A stretch of DNA of 64,000 nucleotides, taken from positions 124,001-188,000 of the IMG/VR virus record IMGVR_UViG_3300037502_002993; one strand, 5' to 3'. Both the position numbers and the translations under genes were made by a program. Below the pieces are notes generated by a model, which saw nothing but the letters and a program-made list of their open reading frames with translations, made no database searches and was not told the DNA's origin. The first letter of the stretch is position 1. Every line of letters starts with the position of its first letter. Below, in pieces: positions 1 to 48,716 of the stretch.

Positions 1-1573
1 CGGCATCACCCTTGCCCCTCACTCCGACTACATCGCCACCTACTACTACGAAGACGCGTCGACGATGAGCGGCCTTGAGGTATGTGCGGCGATTGTCGTC
101 CTCAATCCGAACATCCCCTCCCCCGTCTCCATTGACTATCAAGTGGTGGGGGGTGACCATGCGTTCTCCACTACCGCACTTGCAGAAGTCCTGGAAACGC
201 TCCGTGACAACGAACAGCCCGTCCAGTGGGCCAGCATTGTCGGTAAGCCCACCATGTTCCCTCCTGGTGGTCACCTACACGCCCTGTGGGAGCTGTATGG
301 CTTTGAATACGTCACTATCCAGCTGGAGCGGATGGTCCGTGCCATTCTGGTGGGTGATCAAGCGACGATGGATGAGATCCGCGCCTACGCCCTACGTCTC
401 CATGAAGACGGCATTGACTACACCGACGCGCTTGATTCGCGTTTCCAGGATCACTTAGCTGATAGTAGCAATCCCCACAGTGTTACCAAAGCACAAGTGG
501 GTCTTGGGAGCGTACCGAACTGGCCTGGTGCTAACCAAACCGAGGCACAGCAAGGAGACCGCAATGACCGCATTATGACACCCCTGCGGACCGCTCAGGC
601 GATTACCACGCAAGCCCTGACGCCTCTTAATGCCCACGTTAATAACACCAACAATCCCCACAGTGTTACCAAAGCACAAGTGGGTCTTGGTAGTGTTCCC
701 GACTGGCCAGGGGCCACTCAAGCTGAGGCCGAGTCCGGCACACGCAATGACCGCATCATGACCCCACTGCGGACTGCCCAAGCGATCTCCACCCAGGCAC
801 TGGCTCCTTTGAACTCGCATGTTCAGAACACCAACAATCCCCACAGTGTTACCAAAGTCCAAGTCGGGTTAGGGAGTGTTCCCGACTGGCCAGGGGCCAC
901 TCAAGCTGAGGCCGAGTCCGGCACACGCAATGACCGCATTATGACTCCCCTACGTAATGCCCAAGCCTTCCCGAGGCGATTTAATGAGCAGGTGCAGAAT
1001 GGCTTTTCCATGCCCAGAAACCAAGACAACTCCACCTTGTCTTTTGGGTCGTGGAATAATGACGGTGCGTTTATACGTCACCGGTCCCCAGATAACAATA
1101 GTGCGTTTTTAGACCTTTCCTGTGGTAATACTACAACGGGCACAAGTCGTAAACTTCAGTTTGGTGGCGGTACCACCAATAATTTTTCCTCCTGGTTAAC
1201 CCTTGATCACGACCTCGCATATTTCACCGGACGTATTAACGCCGTTGATTATTATGTCCGTTCTGATGAACGTTATAAAACTAACCTACGGCCCATTGAC
1301 GATCCACTTGGACGACTTGCTGGGATTGAGGGACTGTTTTATGAGTTCATTGACGACGAAAGTCACGCGGCGGGGTTGAGTGCACAACAACTACAGAAGG
1401 TTCTTCCACAGGCAGTTCGATCGGTTATCGACGATGATGGAAAAGATCGATTACATATCAACCATGGCGGACCTATTGCCCTTTTGGTTAGTTCAGTTAA
1501 CGCACTTCGTGAGATAGTAGATAAACAGAGTGCAGAAATAGACCGTTTGAAAGAGTCAGTGGGGGAACGGTAG
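1..1573 (+). CDS. Tail fibre protein with C-terminal intramolecular chaperone (peptidase S74-like); 5'-truncated by the window
   Basis: Frame is open from base 2 (GITLAPHSDY...) into the 65..1573 ORF. It has NPHxVTKAQVGLG fibre repeats and a C-terminal SDERYKTNLRPI...GLSAQQLQKVLPQAV...coiled coil, typical of S74 chaperones. Confidence 0.85.
   Translation, partial: GITLAPHSDYIATYYYEDASTMSGLEVCAAIVVLNPNIPSPVSIDYQVVGGDHAFSTTALAEVLETLRDNEQPVQWASIVGKPTMFPPGGHLHALWELYGFEYVTIQLERMVRAILVGDQATMDEIRAYALRLHEDGIDYTDALDSRFQDHLADSSNPHSVTKAQVGLGSVPNWPGANQTEAQQGDRNDRIMTPLRTAQAITTQALTPLNAHVNNTNNPHSVTKAQVGLGSVPDWPGATQAEAESGTRNDRIMTPLRTAQAISTQALAPLNSHVQNTNNPHSVTKVQVGLGSVPDWPGATQAEAESGTRNDRIMTPLRNAQAFPRRFNEQVQNGFSMPRNQDNSTLSFGSWNNDGAFIRHRSPDNNSAFLDLSCGNTTTGTSRKLQFGGGTTNNFSSWLTLDHDLAYFTGRINAVDYYVRSDERYKTNLRPIDDPLGRLAGIEGLFYEFIDDESHAAGLSAQQLQKVLPQAVRSVIDDDGKDRLHINHGGPIALLVSSVNALREIVDKQSAEIDRLKESVGER
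463..960 (+). repeat. Three tandem ~183 bp (61 aa) intragenic repeats
   Basis: AATCCCCACAGTGTTACCAAAG recurs at about 470, 653 and 836; copies 2 and 3 are nearly identical at DNA level. Confidence 0.95.
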
Positions 1574-10004: not shown

Positions 10005-11444
10005 TTATTTCTTTGAACCCTCAGCAAAGCCCAAAGGTTTGATGGTCGCCTTTTGTTCTTCACTAAACCAATAGGGGATGTAAACACCCTGACGCATGCG
10101 TAACAGATCAACAATGGAAAGGAAAGGAAGATGATTTGCCTCGTCCTTAACCGGCACCCAGTAATCTCGGGTATCAAGCAGGACCTCCCAATCATACCCC
10201 ATCTTGATGAGGTCTTGATAAAGCTCTTCCGGGGTACAGAGGATCTCTCCCCACTTCGTGGACTGTAATTGCCACAGCTGGAGAAGGTCTGAGGTGAACT
10301 TTACCGCCTTTCTGAGTTTGGGATCATCATCCAGCTTACGACGCACCTTAGTACGTTGTAATTTAACATCAGGACGCAGGACCATGGCATAGCTTTGCAG
10401 GTTGCCCTCAATACCAAAGCGCCCATTCTCCTTACAGTAATCAAACTCAGTTAATGAGGGTTGGACGCCTTCTGACTGACTGACGATAATGTTGAACGGT
10501 AGTCCCGTCACGCCATTCTTACCGCGCAGGTTTTTGATGGTCAGTTTGACCAAATCCGTATCGCCCTGTACCGCATTGCCATTATCACGGGGGTACTCGG
10601 GGGTCTTGTCTTTGGTCTGCATGGGTTTGTTGGAGAACACCATCCACAGGTTCGTGGGGAGGTCAAAGAACCCCTTGGACACCCCTGCCAGTGTGGTGTC
10701 CTTTTCAAGGAAGGTCAATGGACGCTTGTCCTTGGCATACATCTCCATGTTGATCACATCGGTCACGTGGGCCGTCATGAACATGTAGATACCACCCCGC
10801 GGTACCAGCTGAGTGAGCTGATTGAACATCTGCTTCTTGGCTTTACCGCTGTTCATCGCTTCGGTGTTCAGGTCAGACTCACCGATCTTACCCTTGTCGT
10901 AAATGGTCTCAGTGGTTGAGATATTGAACTTCGACAGGGAGTCGATATCCACCTGAGCTGGATAGATGGCTTTATGGACCTCACTGTCCTTACCAACAAA
11001 CGGGGTTTCGTACAGGTGTTTGTCTTGTTCCTTACCGCGCTGCTTGACGACCTCTTTAAAGATATTGAAGAACTCATCCCCGTTATAGCGAGACACATCC
11101 GTAAAAGCAAAGGAGTCGTCTTCATAAAAGTCGATTGACGCAAGGTAGCTGTCCATCTTCTGGTACTTCGTCAGCCGCTGGATCGGGAACAGGGTGGCCT
11201 CACTGTCATAGATCAGGGTATCGGTTTCACGGAATGCCCGCTTGACCATGCTATTCATGTACATCAGGAGTTCTGACTTAAAGTTGTTCGGCCGTGCCAC
11301 GATCCCAGTGATGCCTGCAACCCCACCATTGAGGATATACTCCCCATGGCGACCGGGTTGATAGTGCCCAGATGAAATATCAAACAGACACCCTACATTG
11401 ATGGCCGGGCGGTAGATGGGCGGCAGAAAACGATTCTTAAACAT
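10005..11444 (-). CDS. uvsX: UvsX/RecA-like recombinase (phiKZ gp152-like)
   Basis: GITGIVARPNNFKS Walker-A variant, IYDSE, VDIDSLS Walker-B region, FMTAHV; 479 aa. Confidence 0.85.
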   Translation of the reverse strand: MFKNRFLPPIYRPAINVGCLFDISSGHYQPGRHGEYILNGGVAGITGIVARPNNFKSELLMYMNSMVKRAFRETDTLIYDSEATLFPIQRLTKYQKMDSYLASIDFYEDDSFAFTDVSRYNGDEFFNIFKEVVKQRGKEQDKHLYETPFVGKDSEVHKAIYPAQVDIDSLSKFNISTTETIYDKGKIGESDLNTEAMNSGKAKKQMFNQLTQLVPRGGIYMFMTAHVTDVINMEMYAKDKRPLTFLEKDTTLAGVSKGFFDLPTNLWMVFSNKPMQTKDKTPEYPRDNGNAVQGDTDLVKLTIKNLRGKNGVTGLPFNIIVSQSEGVQPSLTEFDYCKENGRFGIEGNLQSYAMVLRPDVKLQRTKVRRKLDDDPKLRKAVKFTSDLLQLWQLQSTKWGEILCTPEELYQDLIKMGYDWEVLLDTRDYWVPVKDEANHLPFLSIVDLLRMRQGVYIPYWFSEEQKATIKPLGFAEGSKK

Positions 11445-11597: not shown

Positions 11598-12443
11598 ATG
11601 ACCCAACACACTTTCCGTCAGCTGTACACTGCATTAGAAGAGTTTCGAGAGGTTGGCAATAACGAAACCGTCTCCAACGAAAGTATTCGTCAGTTCCTCA
11701 CTAACCGAGCTCCTAAGTTGGTCTCTTTATTGAGCGATGTGTTCCGCACCCTATCCACTTGGGATTATAGCCAGCCCGAAGTGCTCAATGTGCGTTCGAT
11801 CGAAGGGGTGCTCAGGAAAGCGGATTTCCAGGAGCTTGAAGGGGTGCTGATGATGAAGCCGGTGGGCTTCAATACCAAGCAGGGTCCTCTTGATGTGTAT
11901 GCCCAACAACTGCTTGACAGACAGGTGGACTCTCTGGTATTGACCAAGGATGTCCTGTCTCGTGTACAGGATGTGCTGAGTGGGTACGTGAGTGACCCTG
12001 AGGCACTCAAGGAGAGGGCTAGGGAGCCGCGAGTACTCAAGGAGCAACTCACTGCCCTTGCTCGGTACAAAGAGCGTGAGGCGCCCTGGTTGGTCGAGGG
12101 AAACCGCACCCACGAGGCTGACTTCACCGTCCTGTTCCATAACCTTAAAGCTTTCAGTGAAACCGCACGACTGGTCAATGCCGTGAACGCCAAACGCTGG
12201 TCAGTGGCCCCACCGAAAGAGGTGGCTATGCGCGGCCAATCCCTTAGTCGAGTAGCAGAAGCCCTTCAGCAGATAATGGAAGGGGGCGGTGTAGTGCCTC
12301 ATCGGGATACCCTTCTTCTTCTGGCCAGTGAGATCGAACTCGCTGCGCTTTGGCTTGAATGGTATTCCGTCCTCACTACTCGCATCATGGACCTGACGGC
12401 GGCTATGAAAACCAATGAACGTAAACTCATGAGGGTTCTGTAA
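11598..12443 (+). CDS. Putative virion structural protein
   Basis: ATG 11598 with GAGG SD; divergent from uvsX; stop overlaps the next start (TAATG). Confidence 0.6.
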   Translation: MTQHTFRQLYTALEEFREVGNNETVSNESIRQFLTNRAPKLVSLLSDVFRTLSTWDYSQPEVLNVRSIEGVLRKADFQELEGVLMMKPVGFNTKQGPLDVYAQQLLDRQVDSLVLTKDVLSRVQDVLSGYVSDPEALKERAREPRVLKEQLTALARYKEREAPWLVEGNRTHEADFTVLFHNLKAFSETARLVNAVNAKRWSVAPPKEVAMRGQSLSRVAEALQQIMEGGGVVPHRDTLLLLASEIELAALWLEWYSVLTTRIMDLTAAMKTNERKLMRVL

Positions 12444-13276
12444 TGAGGAATCGTCATTTAAGGGGCACTAGCTCACAGCTGAATCAGTTGAACATGGAGG
12501 CCGGTTCGTTAGCTATTGATACCGAAAAGAACGCTCTGCGCTTCTATGATGGAGAAACCCAAGGCGGGTTTGAGGTGTTAGGCACCCGGGCCTATGAACC
12601 CCCGCCTTTACCAGGGCCTCAAACACTGGTAGGAGGAGACCTCCAGGCGGGGTTCTATGGAGAAACCACTCCTGAGGAGTTCATCTCCTACGGTGCGTTA
12701 AGCACTTTGGTAGGGCTCTCCGCGGGGACCCTCCAGCATGATGCTGAATCCTTCTGGCTGAAGTTCAGTCTCGATGGGTCCCCGCTGTACGTCATGAAGA
12801 AGCCTGCACGACACACGGTGTCGTGGGATCAGCTGCACGCGGCGGGCCTGGTCTTTGGGACCAACACTGTGGAGATTGATGGACTCACCTACCAGGTCCG
12901 CCTCCTCAAAGGGGCCAACTCCGACCCCACCACCGATGCCACGGGCTGGGACATCCCCACCAGCCATGGGTCGGAGTGGAACCGACTCATCTACCCCGTG
13001 CACTCAGGCGTACACACCGACACCCGCAACCCCAGTGTGCACAGTGACCCCACGGCCGCGCCCTTCGGCGCCTGGGCGCAGTACAGTGACGCGGATCTGG
13101 TATTGCGTGGTACCGACAATGGTCGCGCCAACTGGTGTCAGGAAACCCCCGCCACCAGCACCAATCGCGTGCCTCGTGGTGCTTCTGGTGTTACGCGCTT
13201 GGATCGCGCTCCCTCTTCGTTTACGAATTCGACTTACGGTTGGAGAGCGGTACTCGTCCCCATCTTAGACAACTGA
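12443..13276 (+). CDS. Mtd-like receptor-binding protein, paralogue 1 (Mtd_N-like N-terminus plus C-type-lectin/FGE-like C-terminus; DGR-type target)
   Basis: N-terminal LRGT..QL...GSLAIDTEKNALRFYDGETQGG resembles Mtd_N; C-terminal WCQE...RVxRG..G..R......GWRAVL resembles CLec variable proteins. Confidence 0.75.
   Translation: MRNRHLRGTSSQLNQLNMEAGSLAIDTEKNALRFYDGETQGGFEVLGTRAYEPPPLPGPQTLVGGDLQAGFYGETTPEEFISYGALSTLVGLSAGTLQHDAESFWLKFSLDGSPLYVMKKPARHTVSWDQLHAAGLVFGTNTVEIDGLTYQVRLLKGANSDPTTDATGWDIPTSHGSEWNRLIYPVHSGVHTDTRNPSVHSDPTAAPFGAWAQYSDADLVLRGTDNGRANWCQETPATSTNRVPRGASGVTRLDRAPSSFTNSTYGWRAVLVPILDN
13169..13243 (+). repeat. DGR-like variable region VR1
   Basis: Aligns without gaps to 27485..27559 (-) and 48463..48537 (+); 14 of 25 codons identical, 11 vary as NNY. 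Confidence 0.8.
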
Positions 13277-13452
13277 TGGGCACTCACACCGCTCACCGAT
13301 GGAGGCGTGCAGTCCTCGTGCCGGTATAACGCCACCGTCACACGGACCGCCCACCACTGGGGGAGAGCAGTCCTCGTCCCCATCCTAAACGACTGATGAG
13401 CACTCACACCGCTCACCGATGGGGGCGTGCTGTCCTTCAGTTAGTTATCTAA
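13241..13452 (+). repeat. Array of four ~60 bp hairpin units (A-B-A'-C) encoding alternative C-terminal tails
   Basis: Units start TGG at 13241, 13300, 13358 and 13420 and read RAVLVPILDN*, RAVLVPV*, RAVLVPILND* and RAVLQLVI*. Confidence 0.85.
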
Positions 13453-13455
13453 AGT

Positions 13456-13490
13456 GACATAAACCCCTCCCGTAATGGGAGGGGTTCTTT
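13456..13490. terminator. Hairpin terminator
   Basis: AACCCCTCCC-GTAAT-GGGAGGGGTT then CTTT; GACATA on the left. Confidence 0.8.
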
Positions 13491-13525
13491 CTACGTTTAC
13501 GCAGAGTCGGTCTTCGGACCGACGT

Positions 13526-23655: not shown

Positions 23656-26142
23656 GTGTTCATTACACGACTGCGACTTGAAGGGTATAAGCGGTTGATG
23701 CTTGCTTCTATCAAGGTATTTGAGATTACCCCTCGCCACAGTTTACAGATCATTCTGGGTACAAATGGGTCGGGAAAATCTTCCGTGTTGGAGGAGATGT
23801 CCCCCGTTCCCGGGAACAAAGGGGACTATATCAAAGGGGGAAAGAAGATCTTCGAGTGTCAACACAATGGACATGCCTACGTACTAACCAGCCATTATGT
23901 CCATGGTAGTGGGAAGCACTCCTTTCTCAAGGACGGAGAAGAACTCAACAAAGGGGAAACCCTTCAGATTCAAAAAGAGCTCGCCTTTCAAGAGTTTGGC
24001 CTTAACAAAGAACGCTTAGATGTTCTACTGGGCATTACCCGTTTTACCTCCATGAGCGTGGCCAAGAGGCGGGAGTGGCTGACGGAGTTAAGTCCGGTGG
24101 ACCTCAATTACGCCTTTTCCATTCTGAAGACCGTTAAAGGAGCCAAACGGGATGCTGATGGGGTGGTCAAGCACACCGCACAGCGCATCCATCGGGAAGC
24201 CCAGGACTTTCCTGGTGAGAGTGAACGTCAAGCGCTGAAACAGCGGGTTGCGAAACTCACCGAGCAGCTTAACTTACTGTTTCAACACAGTCGAGTGCAG
24301 GGGCAGGGCACCACGTACACGCATATGTCCTTTGTGGACTCCCTTACATCGTCCTGTGAGGCCCTCAAGGGCATTTTAAAGGGTTACCCAGAGCTACCCC
24401 CCACCCTTCAGGTGAAAACCGCCCAGGAGGCCTCTGAGGCTGTTTTAGGCCTATCTAGGGATTACGGCCATCTAGCGGAACAACTGAAAGCCAAACAAGC
24501 GCAGTATCTGGAGTTAGAGAAACAACAACCCCAGGACCAGGTGACTTACACCGCTGAAGACATTGCGTCGCTGAAAACACGCAAGGAGGAACTAAGACGT
24601 ACATTAGAGGCATTACCGACCCCTTCAGGTACGGAACACTTCCCTCTGATTGAGCTCTCTGACTTCCCCGACGCCTCTAGCTACCTTAAAGGAGTGTTGG
24701 ATGAGTGGGAGGGGCTGATGGTGACCATTCCTGATAATAGCACTGGGCGCTTCTCTCGTGAGTTGTTACAACGCACAGTAGAGCGTCACCGAGCGCTATC
24801 GGCCATGAACAGCCAAAAAGAGGACCGCTGTGTTACCATCCGACGGCGCATGCAAAGCCTAAAGGCCTGTGAGGCCGTGGAGTGTCCTAAGTGTCAGCAC
24901 AGTTTCCGTCCTGGGGTCGACCCGAATGAAGTGGCGGCATTAAAAGCCGAATACAAAACCCTCATCGAAACCCTAGAGAAGGACAAGGTGGCGGTAGAGA
25001 AAGACCAGGGGTACATCGAGGCATGTCAAGAGTACCTGGAGTACCGCAAACGCTTCCATCACCTTAGTCGCATGCACCCGCGCCTGAGGGACTTCTTTGT
25101 GGTGTGGGTCGAGAAAGGGTTAATCCAAGCCCCTCTTACTTATCAGTCCGAGTATGCCCAGTGGCGAGAGCAGATGTTCCTCGCCTTAAAGCGGGCAGGG
25201 GAGGAGAAGGCCCTCAAGACGGTAAGTGAACAGCTGAAGATGGCGGAAGACACTCAGCGCTACCAGAACCATCACCTGAAACAACAACTTAACCACCTCC
25301 AGGGGGAGATTGAAACCCTCACAGGTCGAGTGAGGGATGTTCAACAGCAACATCAAGCACTCAAGCGGACGGTGGAGCACATGCGTCAGCATGAAGGCCG
25401 ACTCAACCATGCGATTCGTGAACTGGAAGTGCTGTTGACTGCCCCACCACAACTACTGGAGTCCTCTCTGGTACAGTTGGTACAAGAGCGCATTAAAGAA
25501 CTCCAACTGCAGCTTGCACAAGCCCAGGAACGTTTGTCTAAGTCTGACATTCAGGAGGGCATCCTCCGTGATCTAGAGGCGCAGCATCAAGCGGTGCTGG
25601 AGTCTCAGGGGGACTATGCATTACTGGTGAAAACCATGAGTCCCAATGAAGGGTTGATTGGTCGTTACCTGATGGGCTTCATGCAGATTGTGGTAAAGTT
25701 CATGAATGCCGTGATCGCACGCGTATGGACCCACTCCCTGGAGATCCTTCCCTCTAAGGTAGACCGAGATGAGCTGGATTACCGGTTTCCCTTAGACGTG
25801 CAGAACGGAGCGGTCACTCCACCCGATATTGCATTGGGGAGCAGTGCTCAGCGTGATATCGTAGATTTTGCCTTTCGTCTGCTGATGATGAAGTTCCTCA
25901 AAATCGAACACCTGCCCTTGTACTTGGATGAGATGGGGAACATGTTCGATGAAGAACACCGGGTTAACCTCGTTCGTTTGATCGAGAACATGTTGGAGGT
26001 AGGACACACCTCACAGGTGTTCTTTATCTCCCACTACATGTCCACTCACGGGGCATTGGAGAAAGCAGCAGACGTCTGTGTGGTGGACGACACCAACATC
26101 ACTGTCCCACAACGCTACAACGAACACGTCATTATTCAGTAA
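23656..26142 (+). CDS. sbcC: SbcC/Rad50-like SMC ATPase (phiKZ gp165-like)
   Basis: GTNGSGKSS Walker A, central CPKC zinc hook within coiled coil, LGSSAQ signature, LYLDE Walker B, FISH. Confidence 0.92.
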   Translation: MFITRLRLEGYKRLMLASIKVFEITPRHSLQIILGTNGSGKSSVLEEMSPVPGNKGDYIKGGKKIFECQHNGHAYVLTSHYVHGSGKHSFLKDGEELNKGETLQIQKELAFQEFGLNKERLDVLLGITRFTSMSVAKRREWLTELSPVDLNYAFSILKTVKGAKRDADGVVKHTAQRIHREAQDFPGESERQALKQRVAKLTEQLNLLFQHSRVQGQGTTYTHMSFVDSLTSSCEALKGILKGYPELPPTLQVKTAQEASEAVLGLSRDYGHLAEQLKAKQAQYLELEKQQPQDQVTYTAEDIASLKTRKEELRRTLEALPTPSGTEHFPLIELSDFPDASSYLKGVLDEWEGLMVTIPDNSTGRFSRELLQRTVERHRALSAMNSQKEDRCVTIRRRMQSLKACEAVECPKCQHSFRPGVDPNEVAALKAEYKTLIETLEKDKVAVEKDQGYIEACQEYLEYRKRFHHLSRMHPRLRDFFVVWVEKGLIQAPLTYQSEYAQWREQMFLALKRAGEEKALKTVSEQLKMAEDTQRYQNHHLKQQLNHLQGEIETLTGRVRDVQQQHQALKRTVEHMRQHEGRLNHAIRELEVLLTAPPQLLESSLVQLVQERIKELQLQLAQAQERLSKSDIQEGILRDLEAQHQAVLESQGDYALLVKTMSPNEGLIGRYLMGFMQIVVKFMNAVIARVWTHSLEILPSKVDRDELDYRFPLDVQNGAVTPPDIALGSSAQRDIVDFAFRLLMMKFLKIEHLPLYLDEMGNMFDEEHRVNLVRLIENMLEVGHTSQVFFISHYMSTHGALEKAADVCVVDDTNITVPQRYNEHVIIQ

Positions 26143-27175: not shown

Positions 27176-27215
27176 GACATAAAGTCCCCCTCCCACTGTG
27201 GGAGGGGGCTATGCC
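27176..27215. terminator. Bidirectional hairpin flanked by GACATA/TATGCC
   Basis: CCCCCTCCC-ACTGT-GGGAGGGGG at a convergent junction. Confidence 0.8.
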
Positions 27216-27244
27216 ATCATCTATTTTTTCAACGCGTTTCGTCC

Positions 27245-27487
27245 GGGCGTTACCATCCCTCAACGCGTATTCTCATTAGACCACGGGGGTCAAAGCGGCA
27301 CGCCCCCACTGGTGGGCGGTGTGAGTGCCCATCAGTTGTCTAAGATGGGGACGAGTACCGCTCTCCCCCAGTGGTGGGCGGTCCGTGTGACGGTGGCGTT
27401 ATACCGGCACGAGGACTGCACGCCTCCATCGGTGAGCGGTGTGAGTGCCCATCAGTTGTCTAAGATGGGGACGAGTACCGCTCTCCA
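27245..27487 (-). repeat. Array of four hairpin units (A-B-A-D) encoding alternative C-terminal tails
   Basis: On the minus strand A and B are identical to locus 1; the last unit (27276..27308) reads WGRAALTPVV*. Confidence 0.85.
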
Positions 27488-28288
27488 ACCAAAATGCGAA
27501 TTCGTACCCGAAGAGGTACTGCGACCCAAGAACGTAACACCAGAAAGACCACGATGCACGCGCTGGGTGCTGGTGGCGGTGGTTTCTTGACACCAGTTGG
27601 CGCGACCATTGTCGGTACCACGTAATACCAAATCACTGTCACTGTACTGCGCCCAGGCGCCGAAAGGCGCGGCAGTGGGGTCGGTGTGCACCGTGGGGTT
27701 ACTGGTGTCGGTGTGCACACCGGAGTGGATGGGGTACAACAACCGGTTCCACTCCGACCCGTGGCTGGTGGGGAGGTCCCAACCCGTGGCATCGGTGGTG
27801 GGGTCGGAGGCAGCACCGCGCAGCAGGCGGACCTGGTAGGTGAGTCCATCAATCTCCACAGTGTTGGTCCCAAAGACCAGGCCCGCCGCGTGCAACTGGT
27901 CCCACGACACACTGTGTCGTCCCGGTTTCTTCATGACGTACAGCGGGGACCCGTCAAGGGAGAACTTGAGCCACGCCGACTCGGCATCATGTTGCAGGGT
28001 CCCCGCGGAGAGCCCTACTAGGGTACTCAGGGTACCGTAGGAGATCAACTCTTCAGGAGTAGTTTCACCGTAGAACCCCGCCTGGAGGTCTCCTCCAATC
28101 AAGGTTTGGGGACCCGGTCCCGTAAATACCGGCTCATACGCCCTAGTCCCCAGGATTTCAAAACCACCCTGTATGTCGTCGAGGTGAAAGCGTAACGCTT
28201 TCTTCTCTAAATCGACAGCCATCATCCCTTCAGGTAGATTGAGTGTGTTGTTAAAGGCGGTATCGCCATGAGTAAGTTTTGTCTTCAT
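27452..28288 (-). CDS. Mtd-like receptor-binding protein, paralogue 2 (DGR-type target)
   Basis: 278 aa; near-identical core to paralogues 1 and 3; divergent N-terminus; GGAGGA SD. Confidence 0.75.
   Translation of the reverse strand: MKTKLTHGDTAFNNTLNLPEGMMAVDLEKKALRFHLDDIQGGFEILGTRAYEPVFTGPGPQTLIGGDLQAGFYGETTPEELISYGTLSTLVGLSAGTLQHDAESAWLKFSLDGSPLYVMKKPGRHSVSWDQLHAAGLVFGTNTVEIDGLTYQVRLLRGAASDPTTDATGWDLPTSHGSEWNRLLYPIHSGVHTDTSNPTVHTDPTAAPFGAWAQYSDSDLVLRGTDNGRANWCQETTATSTQRVHRGLSGVTFLGRSTSSGTNSHFGWRAVLVPILDN
27485..27559 (-). repeat. DGR-like variable region VR2
   Basis: See VR1 alignment. Confidence 0.8.
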
Positions 28289-40756: not shown

Positions 40757-42304
40757 TAAAACTCTACCCTACTGTATAGTTTTTTCAGTAGAGGTAAGTG
40801 ATAATGGGACAACCACTTAAGTATACAACTGAAGATTTTATTGACACAGCTACCATGATGTTCGGTGACCACCTTAGCTACGAGAAAGCCGTTTATAGGG
40901 GTAAACGTCAGCGCCTTATTGTAACATGTACGCACCACGGGGAGTTCGATGTAAACCCACTGGTGTTTCTGATGAGTACCCACGGCTGCGCCAATTGTGC
41001 TAGGGATGAAACAAAAGAACGCTTCATACGTCGTTCTTTGGAACTTCATGGTGATCGTTACGACTATAGTCTCGTTGAAGTGGACGGATATACAGACCCT
41101 GTTACGGTTGTCTGTAAAACCCACGGTGCATTCGAAACATCTATTTACGGACATTCTGTAAGGGGCAATCAGTGTCCTAAATGTTCACGAGAACGCGACC
41201 GTACCTGCCCTAACGAGTGGATTAAAAAAGTTAAGAAGATCCACAAGGGTAAGTACGACTATAGTAAGGCAGTCTACATTCACGGTAAGTTGCCAGTTAC
41301 GATTATCTGTCCGCACCACGGGGAGTTCACCCAGCCAGCACGCTCCCACTACGCGGGACATGGATGTAAGCAGTGTCATATTCAGTTTGTTGCTAGGTCG
41401 AATAAAGAGAGATTTGTTAGGCAGGCCAAAGAAAAACATGGTGTTCAGTATGATTACAGCCGCGTAGTGTTTTTGACGACAAAGGAAAAGGTTGAGATAC
41501 TCTGTCGTAAACACGGACCGTTCTGGGTAACCCCGAACGCGCACGCATCTAGTGGCGCGGGCTGTCCACGCTGCATTGAGTCAAAGGGTGAACGAAGAAT
41601 TAGATTATTCCTAGGGAACCATAAAGTTCGGTTTATTCAGGAATATCGGATCGAACCCTTCAGGTATAGATACGATTTCTTCTTACCTGATTACAACTGC
41701 GTAATAGAACACCATGGTGGTCAGCACTACATGCCTGTTAAACGTTTTGGAGGGGAAAAAGCCTTTAAGCAATGTGTGCAGCGAGATAAGAACAAAAAAC
41801 ACATCGCAAAAAGGAAAGGGATTACTTATCGAGTCACTAACTACAAAATGATGAACAACAGCAAACTCGAAAAGAATTTAACCCGCATCCTTCTAGAACT
41901 CGGTCACTCTCTCGACCACTAACCCATTATTACCTATGGTCCGCTTAAAACCCCCCTAACTGCGGGAACCTGCTAATGATGCTGTTACTACCACTTGTCG
42001 GGGGAAACCCACGGCAACACCCACTCCAGTAATGGAAGTAGTGGGCAGGGTAAAAACGTAACAGCTAGGCACAACCGACGCAACGAAGTCCCTACGTTGG
42101 TCAATCGACCAATATGGGATGTGTTCAGAGGCCATCGAAAACTACAGCTTGTTTAATGCAAGCCTAATGACACAGGTATAGAACCCTGTGGTCTCCACGG
42201 AGATTAAAGTGAGTAGAGTAGCTGATTTCTATATCGGCGAAACGGGGGGCTTCTGTTTGCTATTCACGAACCAGAAGAAGATATGGTCCAATTTGAATTG
42301 ATTG
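40757..42304 (+). mobile_element. Group I intron (1548 nt) carrying a homing endonuclease in the P1 loop
   Basis: Exon ends in U and intron ends in G. Core elements P (AACTGCGGGAA), Q (ACCGACGCAAC), R (GTTCAGAGGCCAT) and S (AAGATATGGTCC) are present. IGS GTCCGC at 41939..41944 pairs with exon GCGGAT. Confidence 0.88.
40804..41922 (+). CDS. Intron-encoded homing endonuclease: four DUF723-like Cys/His repeats plus C-terminal Vsr/DUF559-like (EDxHD-type) nuclease
   Basis: Repeats Y..V.Y......V.I.C..HG.F...P..H..G..CP.C; C-terminal ESKGERRI...YDFFLP...IEHHGGQH; visibly more AT-rich than the flanks. Confidence 0.8.
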   Translation: MGQPLKYTTEDFIDTATMMFGDHLSYEKAVYRGKRQRLIVTCTHHGEFDVNPLVFLMSTHGCANCARDETKERFIRRSLELHGDRYDYSLVEVDGYTDPVTVVCKTHGAFETSIYGHSVRGNQCPKCSRERDRTCPNEWIKKVKKIHKGKYDYSKAVYIHGKLPVTIICPHHGEFTQPARSHYAGHGCKQCHIQFVARSNKERFVRQAKEKHGVQYDYSRVVFLTTKEKVEILCRKHGPFWVTPNAHASSGAGCPRCIESKGERRIRLFLGNHKVRFIQEYRIEPFRYRYDFFLPDYNCVIEHHGGQHYMPVKRFGGEKAFKQCVQRDKNKKHIAKRKGITYRVTNYKMMNNSKLEKNLTRILLELGHSLDH

Positions 42305-43743
42305 CTTCCAATTCGTAAGATCTCTCCAAGCAGGGTTGCTCTCACCTCTTACTATAATAAAACGTTTGTCGACCGCTCTTCTCGCTCTACGAATAACTTT
42401 GCTCAATGGGTCACACGCCAAATGACCCAGATCGGACTTGATCCGGATAACGACCAGATCACTAACCTGAAGTTAGGTAATGCGTTTGATCAGTCCATTG
42501 AAGTGCCAAGGGTTTACTCCTTGCTCTCAGCGCGCTTTACGCAATTTGCCGTAGGGCCACTACAGTTCTACTTGAGCTACCATAAACGAGCTGCTCATTT
42601 TGAACAACATGGGATACGGGTAGAACAGGTAGAGAAAGAAGGGCGAACGGTAATCGGGATGGATCGTGAGTCATTAAGTCCCATCACGGTAGATGCCAGT
42701 GACACTTTCTATCTGGGCGATGAGCCCTTAGGTACTCTGTGTCAGGTAGTGGGACTTCCCGAAGCCAAAGCACCGCTGGATATCGCGGAGGTAGGGGTTT
42801 CCAATAAGGTCATCCCGGTGGGGTTGGTGCTGGCTTACCAGATGGGGCTGTCTAAACTCATCGAGAAACTTAATTGTGATGTGGCCAGACACCGACGGGG
42901 CAGTCGGTTTGAAATGGCCGATGATGAGTACAGTGTGGTCTTTCAGGATGAGGTGCTTGTCTTCTCGCGGTTGGATCGACGGGCCTCACTGGTGTTGGCG
43001 GGACTGAATCGCTATCACCGCGCCCTACGGCAATTCAGTGTCTGGGACTTTGATCGTAAAGACGTCTACCACAACGTCCTTCTGGATCAGGGCCTTGGGG
43101 TGCGCTACCTGCGGGAAATCGATACCCTCTTTAATGTCTGGGTTGATCCCATCACAAAAGGACTCCTGGAGGAGATGGGGGAACCCACTGACTTTGGAGG
43201 ACTGCTCCTCAGAAGTGCTGACCTACTGCTACACGACCACGCTCCCAATGAGGTAGAAGGGGAGTACATGCGCTATCGGGGGTATGAGCGCATGGCAGGG
43301 ATGGTCTATGGGGAGCTGGCGAGGGCCTGCAAAGCCTATCACGCGCGCAGTCACTACGGTGATGCTGCAGTGGATCTAAATCCCCACCAGGTGTGGCAGC
43401 GCATTGTGGGTGACCCCTCATCCATGATCGTGGAGGAAGCCAACCCCTTTACGGTGGTCAATGAACAGGAAATCATGACCTATCGTGGAGATGGCGGTCG
43501 TAGTGGTAAGTCCATGGTGAAGCGGACGCGTATCTACTCTGACACTGATGTCGGGGTAGTGAGTGAATCCACCCTAGATTCGGGAGATGTCGGGGTAGTG
43601 GCGTACCTGGCCCCTGATGCGAACTTCACCTCCACTCGGGGATTGACCCGACGTTACGATAAAAGTAAGGATGGCGCAGCAACCCTCCTATCCACTGCTG
43701 CACTCAATGCCCCTTGTGCGGACAGAGATGACGCCAAGAGAAT
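42305..43743 (+). CDS. rpoB: Virion RNAP beta subunit, exon 2
   Basis: LPIRKISP...SESTLDSGDVG...ADRDDAKR-AT; continues exon 1 in frame after splicing. Confidence 0.85.
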
Positions 43744-44203
43744 CCGATAAGTTGGTTCCCCCAGCAGGTAACTGTTGGGTAAACACTCCTCTAATTGCTG
43801 GGACCTCTCGTAAGACCTTAGGTACGATCCCGTTCCGAAAGGAAGCCATGGATAGCCGGGCCTGTAAGAATCCTAAGGATAGAGACAACCATGCAGCGAA
43901 GTCCCTAAGCCTACTCAACGAGTAGGGATGGGATGTGTTCATCGACTATCGAAAGGCGCCCATTAGGGCGAACTGAGTAGAGTAGGGCCAAGCGGTAGGC
44001 CGCTAACGTGGAATGGCGTTAGTTATAAGTCCTTTAAACCGAAACGGGGAGCTTCCTACTTGTTAAGAGAGGAAGAAGATATAGTCAGTCCTTTAGCGAG
44101 AGTTAAAGGTAACCATGGAGTGGTTAGCTCGATCTAGCGAATCGGGTTTGGAAAGGGAAGGAGGATTTCACCCAATTAGGGTGATCTTCATCTGTGTACA
44201 GCG
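43744..44203 (+). ncRNA. Group I intron (460 nt), no endonuclease ORF
   Basis: P (AATTGCTGGGA), Q (CCATGCAGCG), R (GTTCATCGACTAT) and S (AAGATATAGTC); removal restores DDAKR-I-NFISVQ; exon GAAU pairs with GUUC at 43755..43758. Confidence 0.88.
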
Positions 44204-45332
44204 CAACTTTATCTCAGTGCAAGCAAGACAGGGCATTTGGGCGGAAGGGTATACGGTCACGCCACTAAGGACGGGGTATGAACAGGTACTGGCCTCACGG
44301 GTAACAGATCTGTTCGCGACCATGGCACAGCAAGATGGGAAGGTTACGTCAGTGGAAGAGAATTCCATTGTGGTGACCTATAAGGATGGGACGCAGGAGA
44401 AGGTCCTTCTTGGGAAGCGCTACGGTAAAGCCGCTGGGTATACCTACCCACAGACCTTGGTAACGGATCTAAAGGTAGGGGATAAGGTTAAGTCAGGTGG
44501 GGTGATTGCGTATAATCGTAACTATTTCATGCCTGATACCTTTAATCCCGGTCATGTGGTATTGAAAGCGGGGGTAATGTGTAAGGTGGCCCTGATGGAC
44601 CCCATCGATGCTTTGGAAGATGGGTCTGTTATCTCTGAGGAGATCGCCAAGCAGTTCACCACGCAAACCAGTGAGGTCAGGACCCTGCAAGCGCGTTTTG
44701 ATCAGTCTGTCAGGGACCTAGTGAAAGTCGGCGATCATGTGGACTTGGATTCCATTCTATGCATTATTGAAGACCCGGAGATCCGCGATAATCCCCTGTT
44801 CAATGACATTGCCATGGATACCTTAAGAAAGCTCTCTTCCCACACCCCACGAGCAAAAGTGACAGGGGTGGTGAGCCGAGTTGAGGTGTTCTATCATGGT
44901 GAGTTTGAGGACATGTCAGAGTCCCTTCAAGGTGTGGCGGGTCAATCCAATCGTCGTCGCCGTCAAGAGGCCAAGGCCTCAGGGCAGCCCGCTTTCGATG
45001 GTCAGGTGGATACGGGCTTTCGTATCCGTGGGGCCGCCCTTGATCCGGATAGCGTGGCCATTCAGGTGACCATTGATCATGACGTGGGGGTAACTGCGGG
45101 GGATAAGTTGGTGTACGCCAGCCAGCTGAAGTCCGTCATTTCTCGTGTCATGACGGGTCGTAATGAAACCGAAAGCGGTGAAGCCATCGATGCCCTCTTT
45201 GGTAACACCTCTGTGGAGGATCGGATGGTGTTGTCCCCCAAACTCATGGGCACCACCAATACCCTACTCCGGGTCCTTTCCCAACATATCGCATCTGTCT
45301 ATCGAGGACGTAGTGATGTCAAGAGACCGTAA
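44204..45332 (+). CDS. rpoB: Virion RNAP beta subunit, exon 3
   Basis: NFISVQ...LRTGYE...EDGSVISE...GDKLVYASQLKSVI (GDK motif of beta). Confidence 0.85.
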
Positions 45333-47739: not shown

Positions 47740-48561
47740 ATGAAAACACGCTATTTGAGGGGCACTCGTGCACAGTTAAATGCCCTAAATCTCCCTGAGG
47801 GGAATTTAGCTATTGATGTAGAAACCAAGGCTTTACGGTTCTTTGATGGAGAAACCCAAGGCGGCTTTGAGGTCCTGGGAACACGGGCCTATGAGCCCTC
47901 ACCTCCTGGACCCACTGAGTTAATTGCGGGTGATTTAACCACTGGTTTTTATGGCGAGGTGGGGCCTGAGGAGTTCATCACCTACGGTGCCCTGAGTACC
48001 TTGGTTGGGTTGAGTGCGGGGACCCTCCAGCATGATGCTGAATCCCTCTGGCTGAAGTTCTCCCTCGATGGGTCCCCGCTGTACGTCATGAAGAAGCCTG
48101 CACGACACACGGTGTCGTGGGATCAGCTGCACGCAGCGGGCCTGGTCTTTGGGACCAACACGGTGGAGGTCCAAGGACTCACCTACCAGGTCCGCCTGCT
48201 GCGCGGTGCTGCCTCCGACCCCACCACCGATGACATCGGCTTCGACATCCCCACCAGTCATGGGTCGGAGTGGAACCGGTTACTGTACCCCATCCACAGT
48301 GGGGTCCACACCAACACCAATAACCCCACGGTGCACACTGACCCCACTGCTGCGCCTTTTGGGAGCTGGGCACAGTACAGTGACAGTGATTTGGTATTAC
48401 GTGATACCGACAATGGTCGCCTCACCTGGTGTCAAGAAACCGCCGCCACCAGCACCCAGCGCGTGTATCGTGGTAATCCTGGTGTTACGACCTTGTTTCG
48501 CAATACCTCTTCGACTACGCGTTCGGATGTCGGTTGGAGAGCAGTCCTCGTGCCGGTATAA
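47740..48561 (+). CDS. Mtd-like receptor-binding protein, paralogue 3 (DGR-type target)
   Basis: 273 aa; same core; ends with the B-type tail RAVLVPV*. Confidence 0.75.
   Translation: MKTRYLRGTRAQLNALNLPEGNLAIDVETKALRFFDGETQGGFEVLGTRAYEPSPPGPTELIAGDLTTGFYGEVGPEEFITYGALSTLVGLSAGTLQHDAESLWLKFSLDGSPLYVMKKPARHTVSWDQLHAAGLVFGTNTVEVQGLTYQVRLLRGAASDPTTDDIGFDIPTSHGSEWNRLLYPIHSGVHTNTNNPTVHTDPTAAPFGSWAQYSDSDLVLRDTDNGRLTWCQETAATSTQRVYRGNPGVTTLFRNTSSTTRSDVGWRAVLVPV
48463..48537 (+). repeat. DGR-like variable region VR3
   Basis: See VR1 alignment. Confidence 0.8.
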
Positions 48562-48716
48562 CGTCACCGTCACACGGACCACTCACCAGTCCGGGAGAGC
48601 GGCGTGAGTGCCCATCAGTTATCTAAGATGGGGACGAGTGCCGCTCACCAGTGGGGGCGTGCCGCATCGGGTCACTGGCGTGCCCCGCGTAAGCGTGGGG
48701 TCCCTGTGACCTGTTA
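48535..48716 (+). repeat. Hairpin unit array (B - inverted A - Y)
   Basis: 48597..48646 is the reverse complement of unit A (47/50 identical). Confidence 0.85.

What the first reader, a model, noticed from the sequence alone, without database searches (positions are those of the whole stretch)
13241..13452. Arrays of ~60 bp hairpin micro-cassettes encoding interchangeable C-terminal strands follow each Mtd-like gene
Seen: after each gene are tandem units of 58-62 bp joined by the quasi-palindrome CGCYCACCRNTGGRGGMGWGC. Each unit encodes a version of the protein's final strand plus a stop: RAVLVPILDN*, RAVLVPV*, RAVLVPILND*, RAVLQLVI* and RAALTPVV*. Each folds as an imperfect stem-loop. A is GAGCGGT..CCCATC-10 nt-GATGGG..ACCGCTC and B is GTCC-TC-GTGCCGG-10 nt-CCGTCAC-AC-GGAC: same geometry, different sequence. 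Order differs between loci: gene-A-B-A'-C (locus 1), gene-A-B-A-D (locus 2) and gene-B-A(inverted)-Y (locus 3). Locus 3 is what precise loss of unit A from loci 1 or 2 would produce. A' differs from A mostly by synonymous changes, suggesting it has been used as coding sequence. Inference: an integron-attC-like or shufflon-like tail-swapping system, or stacked IMH/hairpin recognition sites for retrohoming. I know no description of such arrays. B also lies in an open -1 frame and A' in the open frame beyond the TGA, so recoding is an alternative route.
Basis: partly seen in the sequence, partly recalled or inferred. Interest (0 to 1): 0.88.

Follow-up and report, generated by a model that had tools for sequence, protein, structure and literature searches.

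The report
Stacked spare gene ends after phage DGR targets
In one giant phage, four of the five receptor-binding-type genes that carry a hypervariable tip are followed by stacks of two or three ~60-base modules, each holding a spare copy of the protein's last strand plus a stop codon; the stacks are real, recent and reshuffled by recombination, but nothing shows a dedicated swapping machine.

Summary
The arrays exist as described. The window is part of a 220.6-kb phiKZ-like contig with five paralogous Mtd-like genes, each with a DGR-type variable region (VR). Four are followed by 58-62-nt modules inserted exactly at the Trp|Arg codon boundary that ends the VR; the fifth has none.

Each module starts with a family-typical last beta-strand plus a stop codon, and ends with a partial inverted copy and the core TGGRGG|MGWGC. 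This core occurs 7 times in the window (0.1 expected).

An orthologue in a near-identical phage (98-100% over the first 400 nt) lacks the 182-nt array cleanly, and all distant relatives lack arrays. So the old gene end is pushed downstream and the arrays are recent.

Module pair A-B is 119-120/120 identical at three loci whose flanks are 89-94% alike. Chimeric units and one flipped hairpin show DNA recombination.

Only unit A folds better than shuffled sequence. No integrase, HUH enzyme or reverse transcriptase lies in the window, and no cognate template repeat lies in the contig.

Best reading: recombination-built stacks of displaced gene ends at the DGR target boundary. The VR-proximal module is the working gene end and possibly the DGR recognition site. 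The attC, shufflon and recoding readings are unsupported.

The parts
12443..13276 (+). Locus 1 Mtd-like target gene (277 aa by ORF; called as 260 aa in the public collection)
   Evidence: ORF list. AF2 model and Mtd/TvpA fold hits. PHROG virion-structural-protein families.
13127..13243 (+). Locus 1 variable region (DGR-type variation at the first two codon positions), ending in the invariant GGTTGG (Gly-Trp)
   Evidence: Alignment of the five paralogous 3' ends.
13244..13305 (+). Unit A (62 nt). It supplies the working gene end RAVLVPILDN plus TGA and forms a two-tier hairpin (7-bp outer stem, 6-bp inner stem, 10-nt loop).
   Evidence: fold z -2.67.
13306..13363 (+). Unit B (58 nt), with the tail RAVLVPV* in the -1 frame. 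Its stem-loop is weak and no better than shuffles.
13364..13425 (+). Unit A' (62 nt), 89% identical to A, with a B-type 5' arm and two stem mismatches
13426..13452 (+). C: the displaced original gene end of locus 1 (RAVLQLVI*), which fits the family pattern R-x-x-L-x-L-V
   Evidence: The locus-1-context relative L103 ends directly in a terminator.
13465..13495 (+). Intrinsic terminator-like hairpin (10-bp stem) that closes the locus 1 transcription unit; the array lies in the 3' UTR
   Evidence: Fold z -4.95.
27452..28288 (-). Locus 2 Mtd-like target gene
27423..27484 (-). Locus 2 unit A, identical to the locus 1 copy
27365..27422 (-). Locus 2 unit B, identical to the locus 1 copy
27303..27364 (-). 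Locus 2 unit A2 (A body with a B-type 3' end)
27276..27302 (-). D: the displaced original gene end of locus 2 (RAALTPVV*). In the orthologue L102 the same sequence position is the working end, RAALVLVV*.
27214..27275 (-). Conserved downstream stem-loop (7-bp stem, loop containing GTAACGCCCGGAC), 60/62 identical to L102
27186..27208 (-). Locus 2 intrinsic terminator, with compensatory stem changes relative to L102
47740..48561 (+). Locus 3 Mtd-like target gene; its end (RAVLVPV*) is supplied by unit B3
48538..48595 (+). Locus 3 unit B3 (B body with an A-type AGAGC start)
48596..48657 (+). Locus 3 unit Ainv: hairpin A with its interior flipped between the outer stems. One outer-stem pair has changed compensatorily (T-A to C-G).
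   Evidence: fold z -2.81.

Best explanation
The arrays are stacks of short modules inserted at the Trp|Arg codon boundary where the DGR variable region of an Mtd-like virion protein ends. In relatives this boundary is the GC-rich start of the IMH.

Each module brings a replacement last beta-strand plus a stop codon, followed by a partial inverted copy of itself and the ~10-nt core GG-MGWGC. The module next to the VR is the working gene end. The gene's earlier end, and earlier modules, are pushed into the 3' UTR and decay.

Stacks are gained, lost, copied between paralogues and rearranged by ordinary DNA processes: gene conversion seeded in the near-identical VR scaffold, microhomology-mediated crossover or template switching at the repeated core, and hairpin flip. 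No dedicated recombinase is needed.

Shown: the anatomy, the insertion site, the displaced ends, recency, chimeras, the inversion, and the restriction to VR ends.

Inferred: the recombination mechanism, and that the VR-proximal A(-B) module doubles as this phage's IMH plus inverted-repeat recognition site for DGR retrohoming.
For: Context.
- The five paralogues show DGR-type codon-position variation on an otherwise invariant scaffold.
- An Avd-like gene follows locus 4.
- Relatives have the canonical target-Avd-TR-RT order, with TR/VR homology ending 4-10 nt after the same TGG.

Insertion site and polarity.
- Locus 5 runs straight from GGTTGG into CGTGCCGCT.
- The locus 2 orthologue L102 is 98-100% identical over the first 400 nt, yet lacks exactly the 182-nt A-B-A2 array. 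Its working end sits where D lies.
- Of 122 family members, 116 end within about 8-13 residues after a final WR. All 14 relative loci read are unit-free.

Tails are real strands.
- AVLVP is a beta-strand in a model with pLDDT 94.
- Natural ends such as WRPVLVPIV and WRPILTPVV exist in the family.

Recombination.
- The paralogues' 3' halves are mosaic. Loci 2 and 5 are 100% identical in alignment columns 701-800 but 54-72% identical over columns 1-400.
- A-B is 119-120/120 identical at loci 1, 2 and 4, while the flanks are 89-94% identical.
- A', A2 and B3 are chimeras of A and B parts.
- Ainv is a flipped hairpin.

Specificity.
- A-type and B-type units occur only at the four VR ends in the whole IMG/VR collection.
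- The core motif occurs 7 times against 0.1 expected.

No dedicated enzyme.
- No integrase, transposase or RT Pfam family was hit by the 56 window ORFs scanned.
- A UvsX-like recombinase and an SbcC-like hairpin nuclease are present.
Against: - A and B are not detectably similar at nucleotide level to the ancestral gene ends, so they are not simple local duplications. Their source is unknown.
- Three identical A-B copies, with only about 6-10 nt of perfect homology on each side, look more site-specific than general recombination would predict.
- The DGR-recognition role is untested. No cognate TR is in the contig, and no RT was seen in the ~100 kb examined.
- Hairpin A lacks the 4-nt GRNA loop and the continuous GC stem of characterised DGR hairpins (PMC3240598).
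- The unit-free L102 also has a diversified VR, so units are not required for a gene to have been a target.
- Everything rests on one metagenomic assembly, in which 120-140-nt identical repeats could have been mis-joined.
Confidence: 0.45

Rival explanations
1. By-product of DGR retrohoming. Occasional cDNAs that carry sequence 3' of the template repeat (IMH* plus spacer hairpins), or cDNAs copied from another target's mRNA, integrate at the IMH core by microhomology. Each such event adds about 60 nt and displaces the old end.
For: - Every junction lies at the same Trp|Arg boundary, which is where TR/VR homology ends in relatives.
- Unit length is in the range of the spacer segment included in BPP-1 cDNAs (my own recollection of Handa et al. 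2018, not checked here).
- A and B are foreign to the ancestral locus.
- Identity with the other loci runs unbroken from the VR scaffold through A-B.
Against: - A-B contains 25 adenines yet is 119-120/120 identical at three loci. Independent adenine-mutagenic cDNAs would differ.
- No TR or RT is available to compare.
- The spacers of relatives show no resemblance.
Confidence: 0.2
2. Functional RNA or DNA elements of the 3' UTR, unrelated to tail choice: hairpins that stabilise the mRNA 3' end or pause transcription or replication. Their coding look would be a leftover of their origin.
For: - The arrays lie between the stop codon and a strong terminator, so they are transcribed.
- The whole 3' region of locus 1 folds well as RNA (z -5.7).
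- The A and B arms co-vary at the inner stem (CCCATC/GATGGG versus CCGG/CCG; read from the sequence).
Against: - Much of the RNA z-score comes from the terminator. The array alone, folded as DNA, has z -1.4.
- B, A' and A2 fold no better than shuffles.
- Locus 5, L102 and all relatives do without the units.
- No T-runs follow the units, and there is no Rfam match.
Confidence: 0.12
3. A dedicated cassette-exchange system (integron-attC-like, shufflon-like or HUH/REP-like) that actively swaps the C-terminal strand within a phage population.
For: - The ~60-nt palindromic units share a junction core.
- One unit is inverted.
- Unit order differs between loci.
- Array presence or absence differs between near-identical phages.
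Against: - No tyrosine or serine recombinase, Rci or Y1/HUH family was hit by the 56 window ORFs scanned.
- There is no GTTRRRY-type core.
- The units are mostly direct repeats, so inversion cannot bring them into the gene.
- The inverted copy encodes R-A-A-stop, not a tail.
- The units are not dispersed.
- About 120 kb of the contig was not examined.
Confidence: 0.06
4. Translational recoding: TGA read-through or a -1 frameshift extends the protein into downstream units, producing alternative C-termini.
For: - Frame 0 stays open for 40 codons beyond the TGA, up to the stop of A'.
- The -1 frame is open through A to the stop of B.
Against: - No X XXY YYZ slippery heptamer precedes the stop (read).
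- The products would be 20-40-residue extensions that repeat the WR-strand motif, not swaps.
- Forty open codons in 60% GC DNA is unremarkable.
- A+B = 120 nt is one observation copied to three loci.
Confidence: 0.03
5. Assembly artefact: short-read assembly of five near-identical 3' ends produced false tandem joins.
For: - The shared VR scaffold plus A-B gives 120-140-nt identical repeats, at or above the usual k-mer sizes.
- The 1.4-kb contig L101 looks like a locus 2/5/4 chimera.
Against: - Four arrays with distinct unit variants (A', A2, B3, Ainv) and distinct flanks lie inside a 220-kb contig.
- The variants cannot be generated by mis-joining the other copies.
- The units occur nowhere else from which they could have been borrowed.
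Confidence: 0.05

Closest known systems
DGR target-site elements: IMH plus downstream GC-rich inverted repeat (hairpin/cruciform), as defined for Bordetella phage BPP-1 (Guo et al. 2011, PMC3240598; survey in Wu et al. 2018, PMC5758913)
   Same: - The position is the same: immediately after the last diversified codon of a C-terminal VR in an Mtd-like protein, overlapping the final conserved codons.
- An inverted repeat follows.
- The same module is shared by several targets of one phage.
- IMH plus hairpin is known to be portable to other genes.
   Different: - Known sites are single; here two or three modules are stacked.
- Known hairpins have continuous 7-10-bp GC stems and 4-nt GRNA loops lying 4-34 bp beyond the VR. 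Relatives L013 and L015 have exactly that, with GAGA loops.
- Hairpin A starts inside the coding end, has a 7x7 internal loop and a 10-nt loop.
- Each module also carries a full replacement gene end with a stop codon.
- No TR or RT has been found to define the IMH.
Integron attC sites and gene cassettes
   Same: Imperfect palindromes of about 60 nt in tandem, conserved more in shape than in sequence, at a fixed junction.
   Different: There is no IntI, no R/L core sites, no ORF between sites, and the units sit at the 3' end of a gene rather than downstream of attI/Pc.
Shufflons and other C-terminal switching systems (Rci/sfx; Mu Gin, P1 Cin tail-fibre inversion)
   Same: Alternative C-terminal segments of a receptor-binding protein are stored next to the gene.
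   Different: Those systems invert kilobase segments between inverted recombination sites using a dedicated recombinase. Here the segments are about 60 nt, mostly direct, and no recombinase was found.
REP/BIME arrays and hairpin-loop inversions at quasi-palindromes (template-switch mutagenesis)
   Same: Tandem imperfect palindromes in 3' UTRs in alternating orientation. The interior of a hairpin is flipped between its stems (Ainv), as in classic hairpin-inversion events.
   Different: REPs are dispersed genome-wide and mobilised by RAYT transposases. These units occur only at four paralogous gene ends and encode gene tails.

Membership tests
DGR target locus | Variable region whose differences map to adenines of a cognate template repeat | tested here: inconclusive
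   The five VRs differ almost only at the first two positions of scattered codons on an invariant scaffold, and loci 2 and 5 are 100% identical just upstream but 88% identical in the VR. However, no TR is available to map adenines.
DGR target locus | Cognate template repeat in the same element | tested here: not met
   Three independent exact-pattern scans built from the VR scaffold found only the five VRs in the 220-kb contig and in the whole collection. A weak TR-like remnant follows Avd (2 of 1000 shuffles reach its score). The contig may be an incomplete genome.
DGR target locus | DGR-clade reverse transcriptase | tested here: inconclusive
   No YxDD ORF and no RVT_1 hit was found in the window or in the other ~40 kb fetched. 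About 120 kb of the contig could not be read.
DGR target locus | Accessory protein Avd next to a target | tested here: met
   L002:10919-11266 matches Pfam bAvd at E 1.5e-5 (below the gathering score) and the PHROG 'Avd protein of DGR' at 5.6e-8. It sits directly after locus 4, as in canonical cassettes.
DGR target locus | C-type-lectin/Mtd-like variable protein with a C-terminal VR | tested here: met
   The AF2 model has pLDDT 94.3. Its top five PDB hits are Mtd variants (E 8e-5 to 8e-4), followed by TvpA. Global TM-scores are low (0.2). Relatives carry Pfam Mtd_N.
Canonical DGR hairpin/cruciform (Guo 2011) | 7-10-bp GC-rich continuous stem with a 4-nt GRNA loop, 4-34 bp after the VR | tested here: not met
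   A has 7-bp and 6-bp stems split by a 7x7 internal loop, plus a 10-nt loop. B has three helices of 3-4 bp and an 8-nt loop, with z -0.2. Relatives L013 and L015 do have GAGA-loop hairpins.
Integron attC / cassette array | IntI-type tyrosine recombinase nearby | tested here: not met
   The 56 window ORFs scanned hit no recombinase family in Pfam. The remainder of the contig was not examined.
Integron attC / cassette array | R''-L''/L'-R' core sites (GTTRRRY) bounding ORF-bearing cassettes | tested here: not met
   The junction core is TGGRGG|MGWGC. The units are 58-62 nt with no ORF of their own.
Shufflon / invertible tail-fibre segment | Inverted recombination sites flanking alternative C-terminal exons, plus an Rci/Gin-type recombinase | tested here: not met
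   The units are direct repeats except for one flipped hairpin interior, which encodes R-A-A-stop. No recombinase was found.
REP/BIME or IS200/IS605-derived palindromic elements | Many dispersed copies and a Y1/HUH (RAYT/TnpA) enzyme | tested here: not met
   There are 6 A-type and 4 B-type copies, all at the four VR ends, and none elsewhere in IMG/VR. The three hits in 185,579 genomes are single and scattered, consistent with chance. No Y1_Tnp hit was found.
Intrinsic terminator | GC stem-loop followed by a T-run | tested here: not met
   No A-type or B-type unit is followed by a T-run; the single pattern match (13420-13439) spans the A'/C junction and is at chance level. Separate terminators lie downstream of the arrays.
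Programmed -1 frameshift / stop read-through | Slippery heptamer or read-through context, plus a conserved extension | tested here: not met
   There is no X XXY YYZ in the 36 nt before the stop. The extensions are open but are absent in locus 5, L102 and the relatives.

The most novel reading that the evidence does not exclude
A-B is a small portable cassette that is copied site-specifically into the Trp|Arg boundary of Mtd-like paralogues. It would then do two jobs at once. It would replace the protein's last strand. It would also install the IMH-plus-inverted-repeat that makes the gene a target of a trans-acting DGR. Its precise loss, as in L102 and locus 5, would be the reverse reaction. 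That would be a natural mechanism for recruiting and retiring DGR targets, or a new kind of micro-cassette exchange driven by retrohoming or hairpin-directed cleavage.
Probability: 0.15. Interest if true: 0.85.

Novelty: new variant of a known kind. Interest (0 to 1): 0.55.

Why it matters
How a DGR recognises its targets, and how a phage gains or loses targets, is known from only a few model systems.

Here the DNA at the VR/IMH boundary is the most dynamic part of five paralogous receptor-binding-type genes:
- Identical 120-nt modules are found at three loci.
- A clean 182-nt presence/absence difference separates near-identical phages.
- Old gene ends are left behind like strata.

If the modules are recognition sites, they would show natural portability of DGR targeting, which so far has only been engineered. 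If they are scars, they record repeated breakage and repair at the homing site, which bears on the unresolved integration step of retrohoming. In either case they matter for annotation: the true C-terminus, and possible false 'repeat' or 'terminator' calls.

Tried and rejected
1. TR search. BLAST of the VR against the window and all fetched loci, and three exact scaffold patterns over IMG/VR, found only the five VRs.
2. RT search. A YxDD regex over the window and loci found nothing.
3. Walking the contig by exact-protein look-up.
4. An Avd homologue search, meant to reach a closer intact cassette, returned one 601-bp contig.
5. Nucleotide similarity of A and B to the ancestral gene ends, forward or reverse: not above shuffles.
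6. Rfam: no family matches the units.
7. Consensus folding of the downstream stem-loops of loci 2, 3 and 4: the alignment was too divergent to be useful.
8. Phage database (GenBank/INPHARED): blastn of the gene plus array found no match.
9. Bacterial genomes: the core motif gave three scattered single hits, consistent with chance.
10. Literature: no description of stacked modules at DGR VR ends was found. The 2026 preprint on RT-associated arrays in jumbo phages concerns arrays upstream of retron-like RTs and is unrelated.
Full report
WHERE WE ARE

The window is bases 124001-188000 of IMGVR_UViG_3300037502_002993, a 220,598-bp viral contig. It is a phiKZ-like jumbo phage: it encodes the PhiKZ major capsid protein, gp119, internal head proteins and the S80 prohead protease.

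The gene before the finding (12443-13276, +) has two paralogues in the window (27452-28288, - strand, and 47740-48561, + strand). Two more lie elsewhere in the contig: locus 4 (L002:9746-10675) and locus 5 (L008:11119-11943).

An AlphaFold model of the locus 1 protein is confident (pLDDT 94.3). Its best PDB matches are the five Mtd variants of Bordetella phage BPP-1, followed by Treponema TvpA; global TM-scores are low. Relatives at about 50% identity carry Pfam Mtd_N. 'Mtd-like' is therefore justified.

DGR CONTEXT

- Over the last ~115 nt before an invariant GGTTGG (Gly-Trp), the five 3' ends differ almost only at the first two positions of scattered codons. Every other column is identical. 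This is the signature of DGR diversification.
- Loci 2 and 5 are 100% identical in the 100 columns before the VR but 88% identical in the VR, so diversification is recent.
- An Avd-like gene follows locus 4 (Pfam bAvd 1.5e-5; PHROG 'Avd protein of DGR' 5.6e-8).
- Distant relatives show the canonical target-Avd-TR-RT order. TR/VR homology ends 4-10 nt after the same TGG codon, and a single GC hairpin with a GAGA loop follows. This matches the elements defined by Guo et al. (PMC3240598).
- In this contig I found no cognate TR (three exact scaffold patterns over the whole collection) and no RT in the ~100 kb I could read.
- After Avd there is only a weak TR-like remnant (2 of 1000 shuffles reach its score).
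- The contig may be incomplete, and about 120 kb of it was not examined.

THE OBSERVATION

Cutting the DNA after GGTTGG at the repeated core GGRGG|MGWGC gives the following orders.

| Locus | Order after GGTTGG |
|---|---|
| 1 | A(62)-B(58)-A'(62)-C |
| 2 | A-B-A2-D |
| 3 | B3-Ainv-Y |
| 4 | A-B-D' |
| 5 | no units; GGTTGG runs straight into CGTGCCGCT (GWRAALVFVGD*) |

- The 17-nt core occurs 7 times in the window, all inside the arrays, against 0.10 expected.
- As single-stranded DNA, A (z -2.7) and the inverted A (z -2.8) fold better than shuffles. B, A' and A2 do not.
- The locus 1 array without its terminator has z -1.4.
- The units have no T-runs, and separate terminators close loci 1 and 2.
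- No Rfam family matches the units.

THE UNITS ARE INSERTIONS THAT DISPLACE THE OLD GENE END

L102 (ENA ERZ27247961) carries the orthologue of locus 2.
- It is 98-100% identical over the first 400 nt of the gene.
- It is 60/62 identical in the stem-loop that follows the array.
- Its terminator shows compensatory changes.
- It lacks exactly the 182 nt of A-B-A2. There GGTTGG is followed directly by CGTGCCGCTTTGGTCCTTGTGGTCTAA (RAALVLVV*), the counterpart of D.

D differs from that working end at 4 of 27 positions, while the flanks differ at 1-2%. This fits a displaced, no longer translated end.

Other relatives agree:
- L103, which has the gene neighbourhood of locus 1, ends GWRPCLRLVE* four bases before its terminator. 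C (RAVLQLVI*) is the corresponding old end of locus 1.
- Of 122 family members, 116 end within about 8-13 residues of a final WR.
- None of the 14 relative loci read has units.

The unit-free state is therefore ancestral, and the arrays are young.

THE TAILS ARE GENUINE

In the model, AVLVP (residues 269-273) is the last beta-strand. Natural family ends include WRPVLVPIV, WRPILVPDV and WRPILTPVV. The tails of A (RAVLVPILDN), B (RAVLVPV) and D (RAALTPVV) are therefore ordinary variants of that strand.

At nucleotide level, however, A and B are not significantly similar to the ancestral ends in either orientation. They are not local slippage duplicates of the ancestral sequence. Their source is unknown.

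THE UNITS ARE TIED TO THE VR ENDS AND ARE REARRANGED BY DNA-LEVEL EVENTS

- There are 6 A-type and 4 B-type copies, all at the four VR ends, and none elsewhere in the contig or in IMG/VR. Bacterial genomes give only three scattered single matches to the core.
- A-B is 120/120 identical between loci 1 and 2, and 119/120 identical to locus 4. The 100 columns before the VR are 89-94% identical, and the gene bodies are 36-90% identical.
- A-B contains 25 adenines, so three independent adenine-mutagenic cDNAs cannot explain this identity.
- The paralogues' 3' halves are mosaics, as expected from gene conversion.
- Several units are chimeras. A' and B3 share AGAGCAGTCCTCGT. A2 has a B-type 3' end. 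The 20-nt terminal junction CACCAGTGGGGGCGTGCCGC recurs at loci 2, 3 and 4.
- Ainv is hairpin A with its interior flipped between the outer stems. One outer-stem pair has changed compensatorily. It encodes R-A-A-stop rather than a tail.
- The inner stems of A and B differ in sequence but both pair (read from the sequence).
- No integrase, serine recombinase, Y1/HUH enzyme or RT was hit by the 56 window ORFs scanned. A UvsX-like recombinase and an SbcC-like hairpin nuclease are present.

INTERPRETATION

The safest statement is this. These are stacks of modules inserted at the Trp|Arg boundary, which is the VR/IMH boundary of DGR targets. The first module is the working gene end. Later modules and the original end are displaced relics. 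Stacks are built, copied between paralogues, trimmed and flipped by recombination at the short core and within the homogenised VR.

It is a reasonable but untested inference that the VR-proximal A(-B) module is also this phage's IMH plus inverted repeat. Two things favour this: it occupies that position, and it is the one part kept identical at three targets. Three things weaken it:
- Hairpin A does not meet the published hairpin definition.
- The unit-free L102 has also been diversified.
- A conserved stem-loop further downstream is an alternative candidate for the recognition structure.

Rivals:
- A retrohoming-overshoot origin is attractive because of the exact site, but it conflicts with the unmutated adenines.
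- The attC-like and shufflon-like readings fail their defining features.
- Recoding has no signal.
- An assembly artefact is unlikely for the arrays as such, because the unit variants are unique. The pairing of upstream genes with downstream tails could still be wrong, and the short contig L101 looks like such a chimera.

NOVELTY

I found no description of stacked modules at DGR target ends. The nearest known thing is the single IMH plus hairpin of DGR targets. I rate this a new variant of that kind, with a modest chance (about 0.15) that it is a portable targeting or tail-exchange cassette.

Noticed in passing
window 43734-44108 (+): A group I intron (Rfam RF00028, 78 bits, full length) lies between ORFs 42302-43750 and 44115-45332, which are probably the two exons of one gene. 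HNH_3 and DUF723 families are hit by ORFs somewhere in the window.
   Followed up: no
window 469-1017 (+): There are 2.7-3 tandem copies of a 183-nt (61-codon) repeat inside ORF 65-1573. This ORF ends in a Peptidase_S74 intramolecular chaperone domain and is therefore a tail-fibre or spike-like protein.
   Followed up: no
window 27214-27275 (-); L002:10803-10859; L008 ~11975-12030; L102:846-905: Long stem-loops lie just downstream of the arrays or gene ends, with a shared loop motif GTAACGCCYGGAC. The copy at locus 2 is 60/62 identical to that of the array-free orthologue, while the displaced end beside it has diverged. This is an alternative candidate for the DGR recognition structure, or a 3' UTR element.
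   Followed up: partly
L002:11298-11360 (contig about 114.6 kb, after Avd): A weak, gapped resemblance to the predicted template repeat sits at the canonical position after Avd (score reached by 2 of 1000 shuffles). It is followed not by an RT but by a DUF4376 gene, a DUF1353 gene and a muramidase. This may be a decayed cassette.
   Followed up: partly
L008:11850-11860 (locus 5 VR): The VR of the array-free locus 5 has a 3-nt deletion relative to the other four. It is identical to the VR in contig L101 from another sample. This suggests locus 5 is no longer being rewritten.
   Followed up: partly
L101 (JGI 3300035670, 1434 bp): This contig combines the locus 2 gene body (100% identical), the locus 5 VR and end (100% identical), and the locus 4 downstream region with Avd. 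It is either a real recombinant in a sister phage or a short-read chimera across the shared repeats.
   Followed up: partly
L002:8842-9735: A sixth paralogue of the same protein family lies directly upstream of locus 4. It has GWRPVLEL followed by a 36-residue extension and no DGR-type VR match.
   Followed up: no
window 23656-26142 (+) and 10005-11444 (-): An SbcC-like subunit of a hairpin/palindrome-specific nuclease and a UvsX-like recombinase are encoded within 1-2 kb of loci 2 and 1 respectively. They are possible players in hairpin processing and gene conversion.
   Followed up: no
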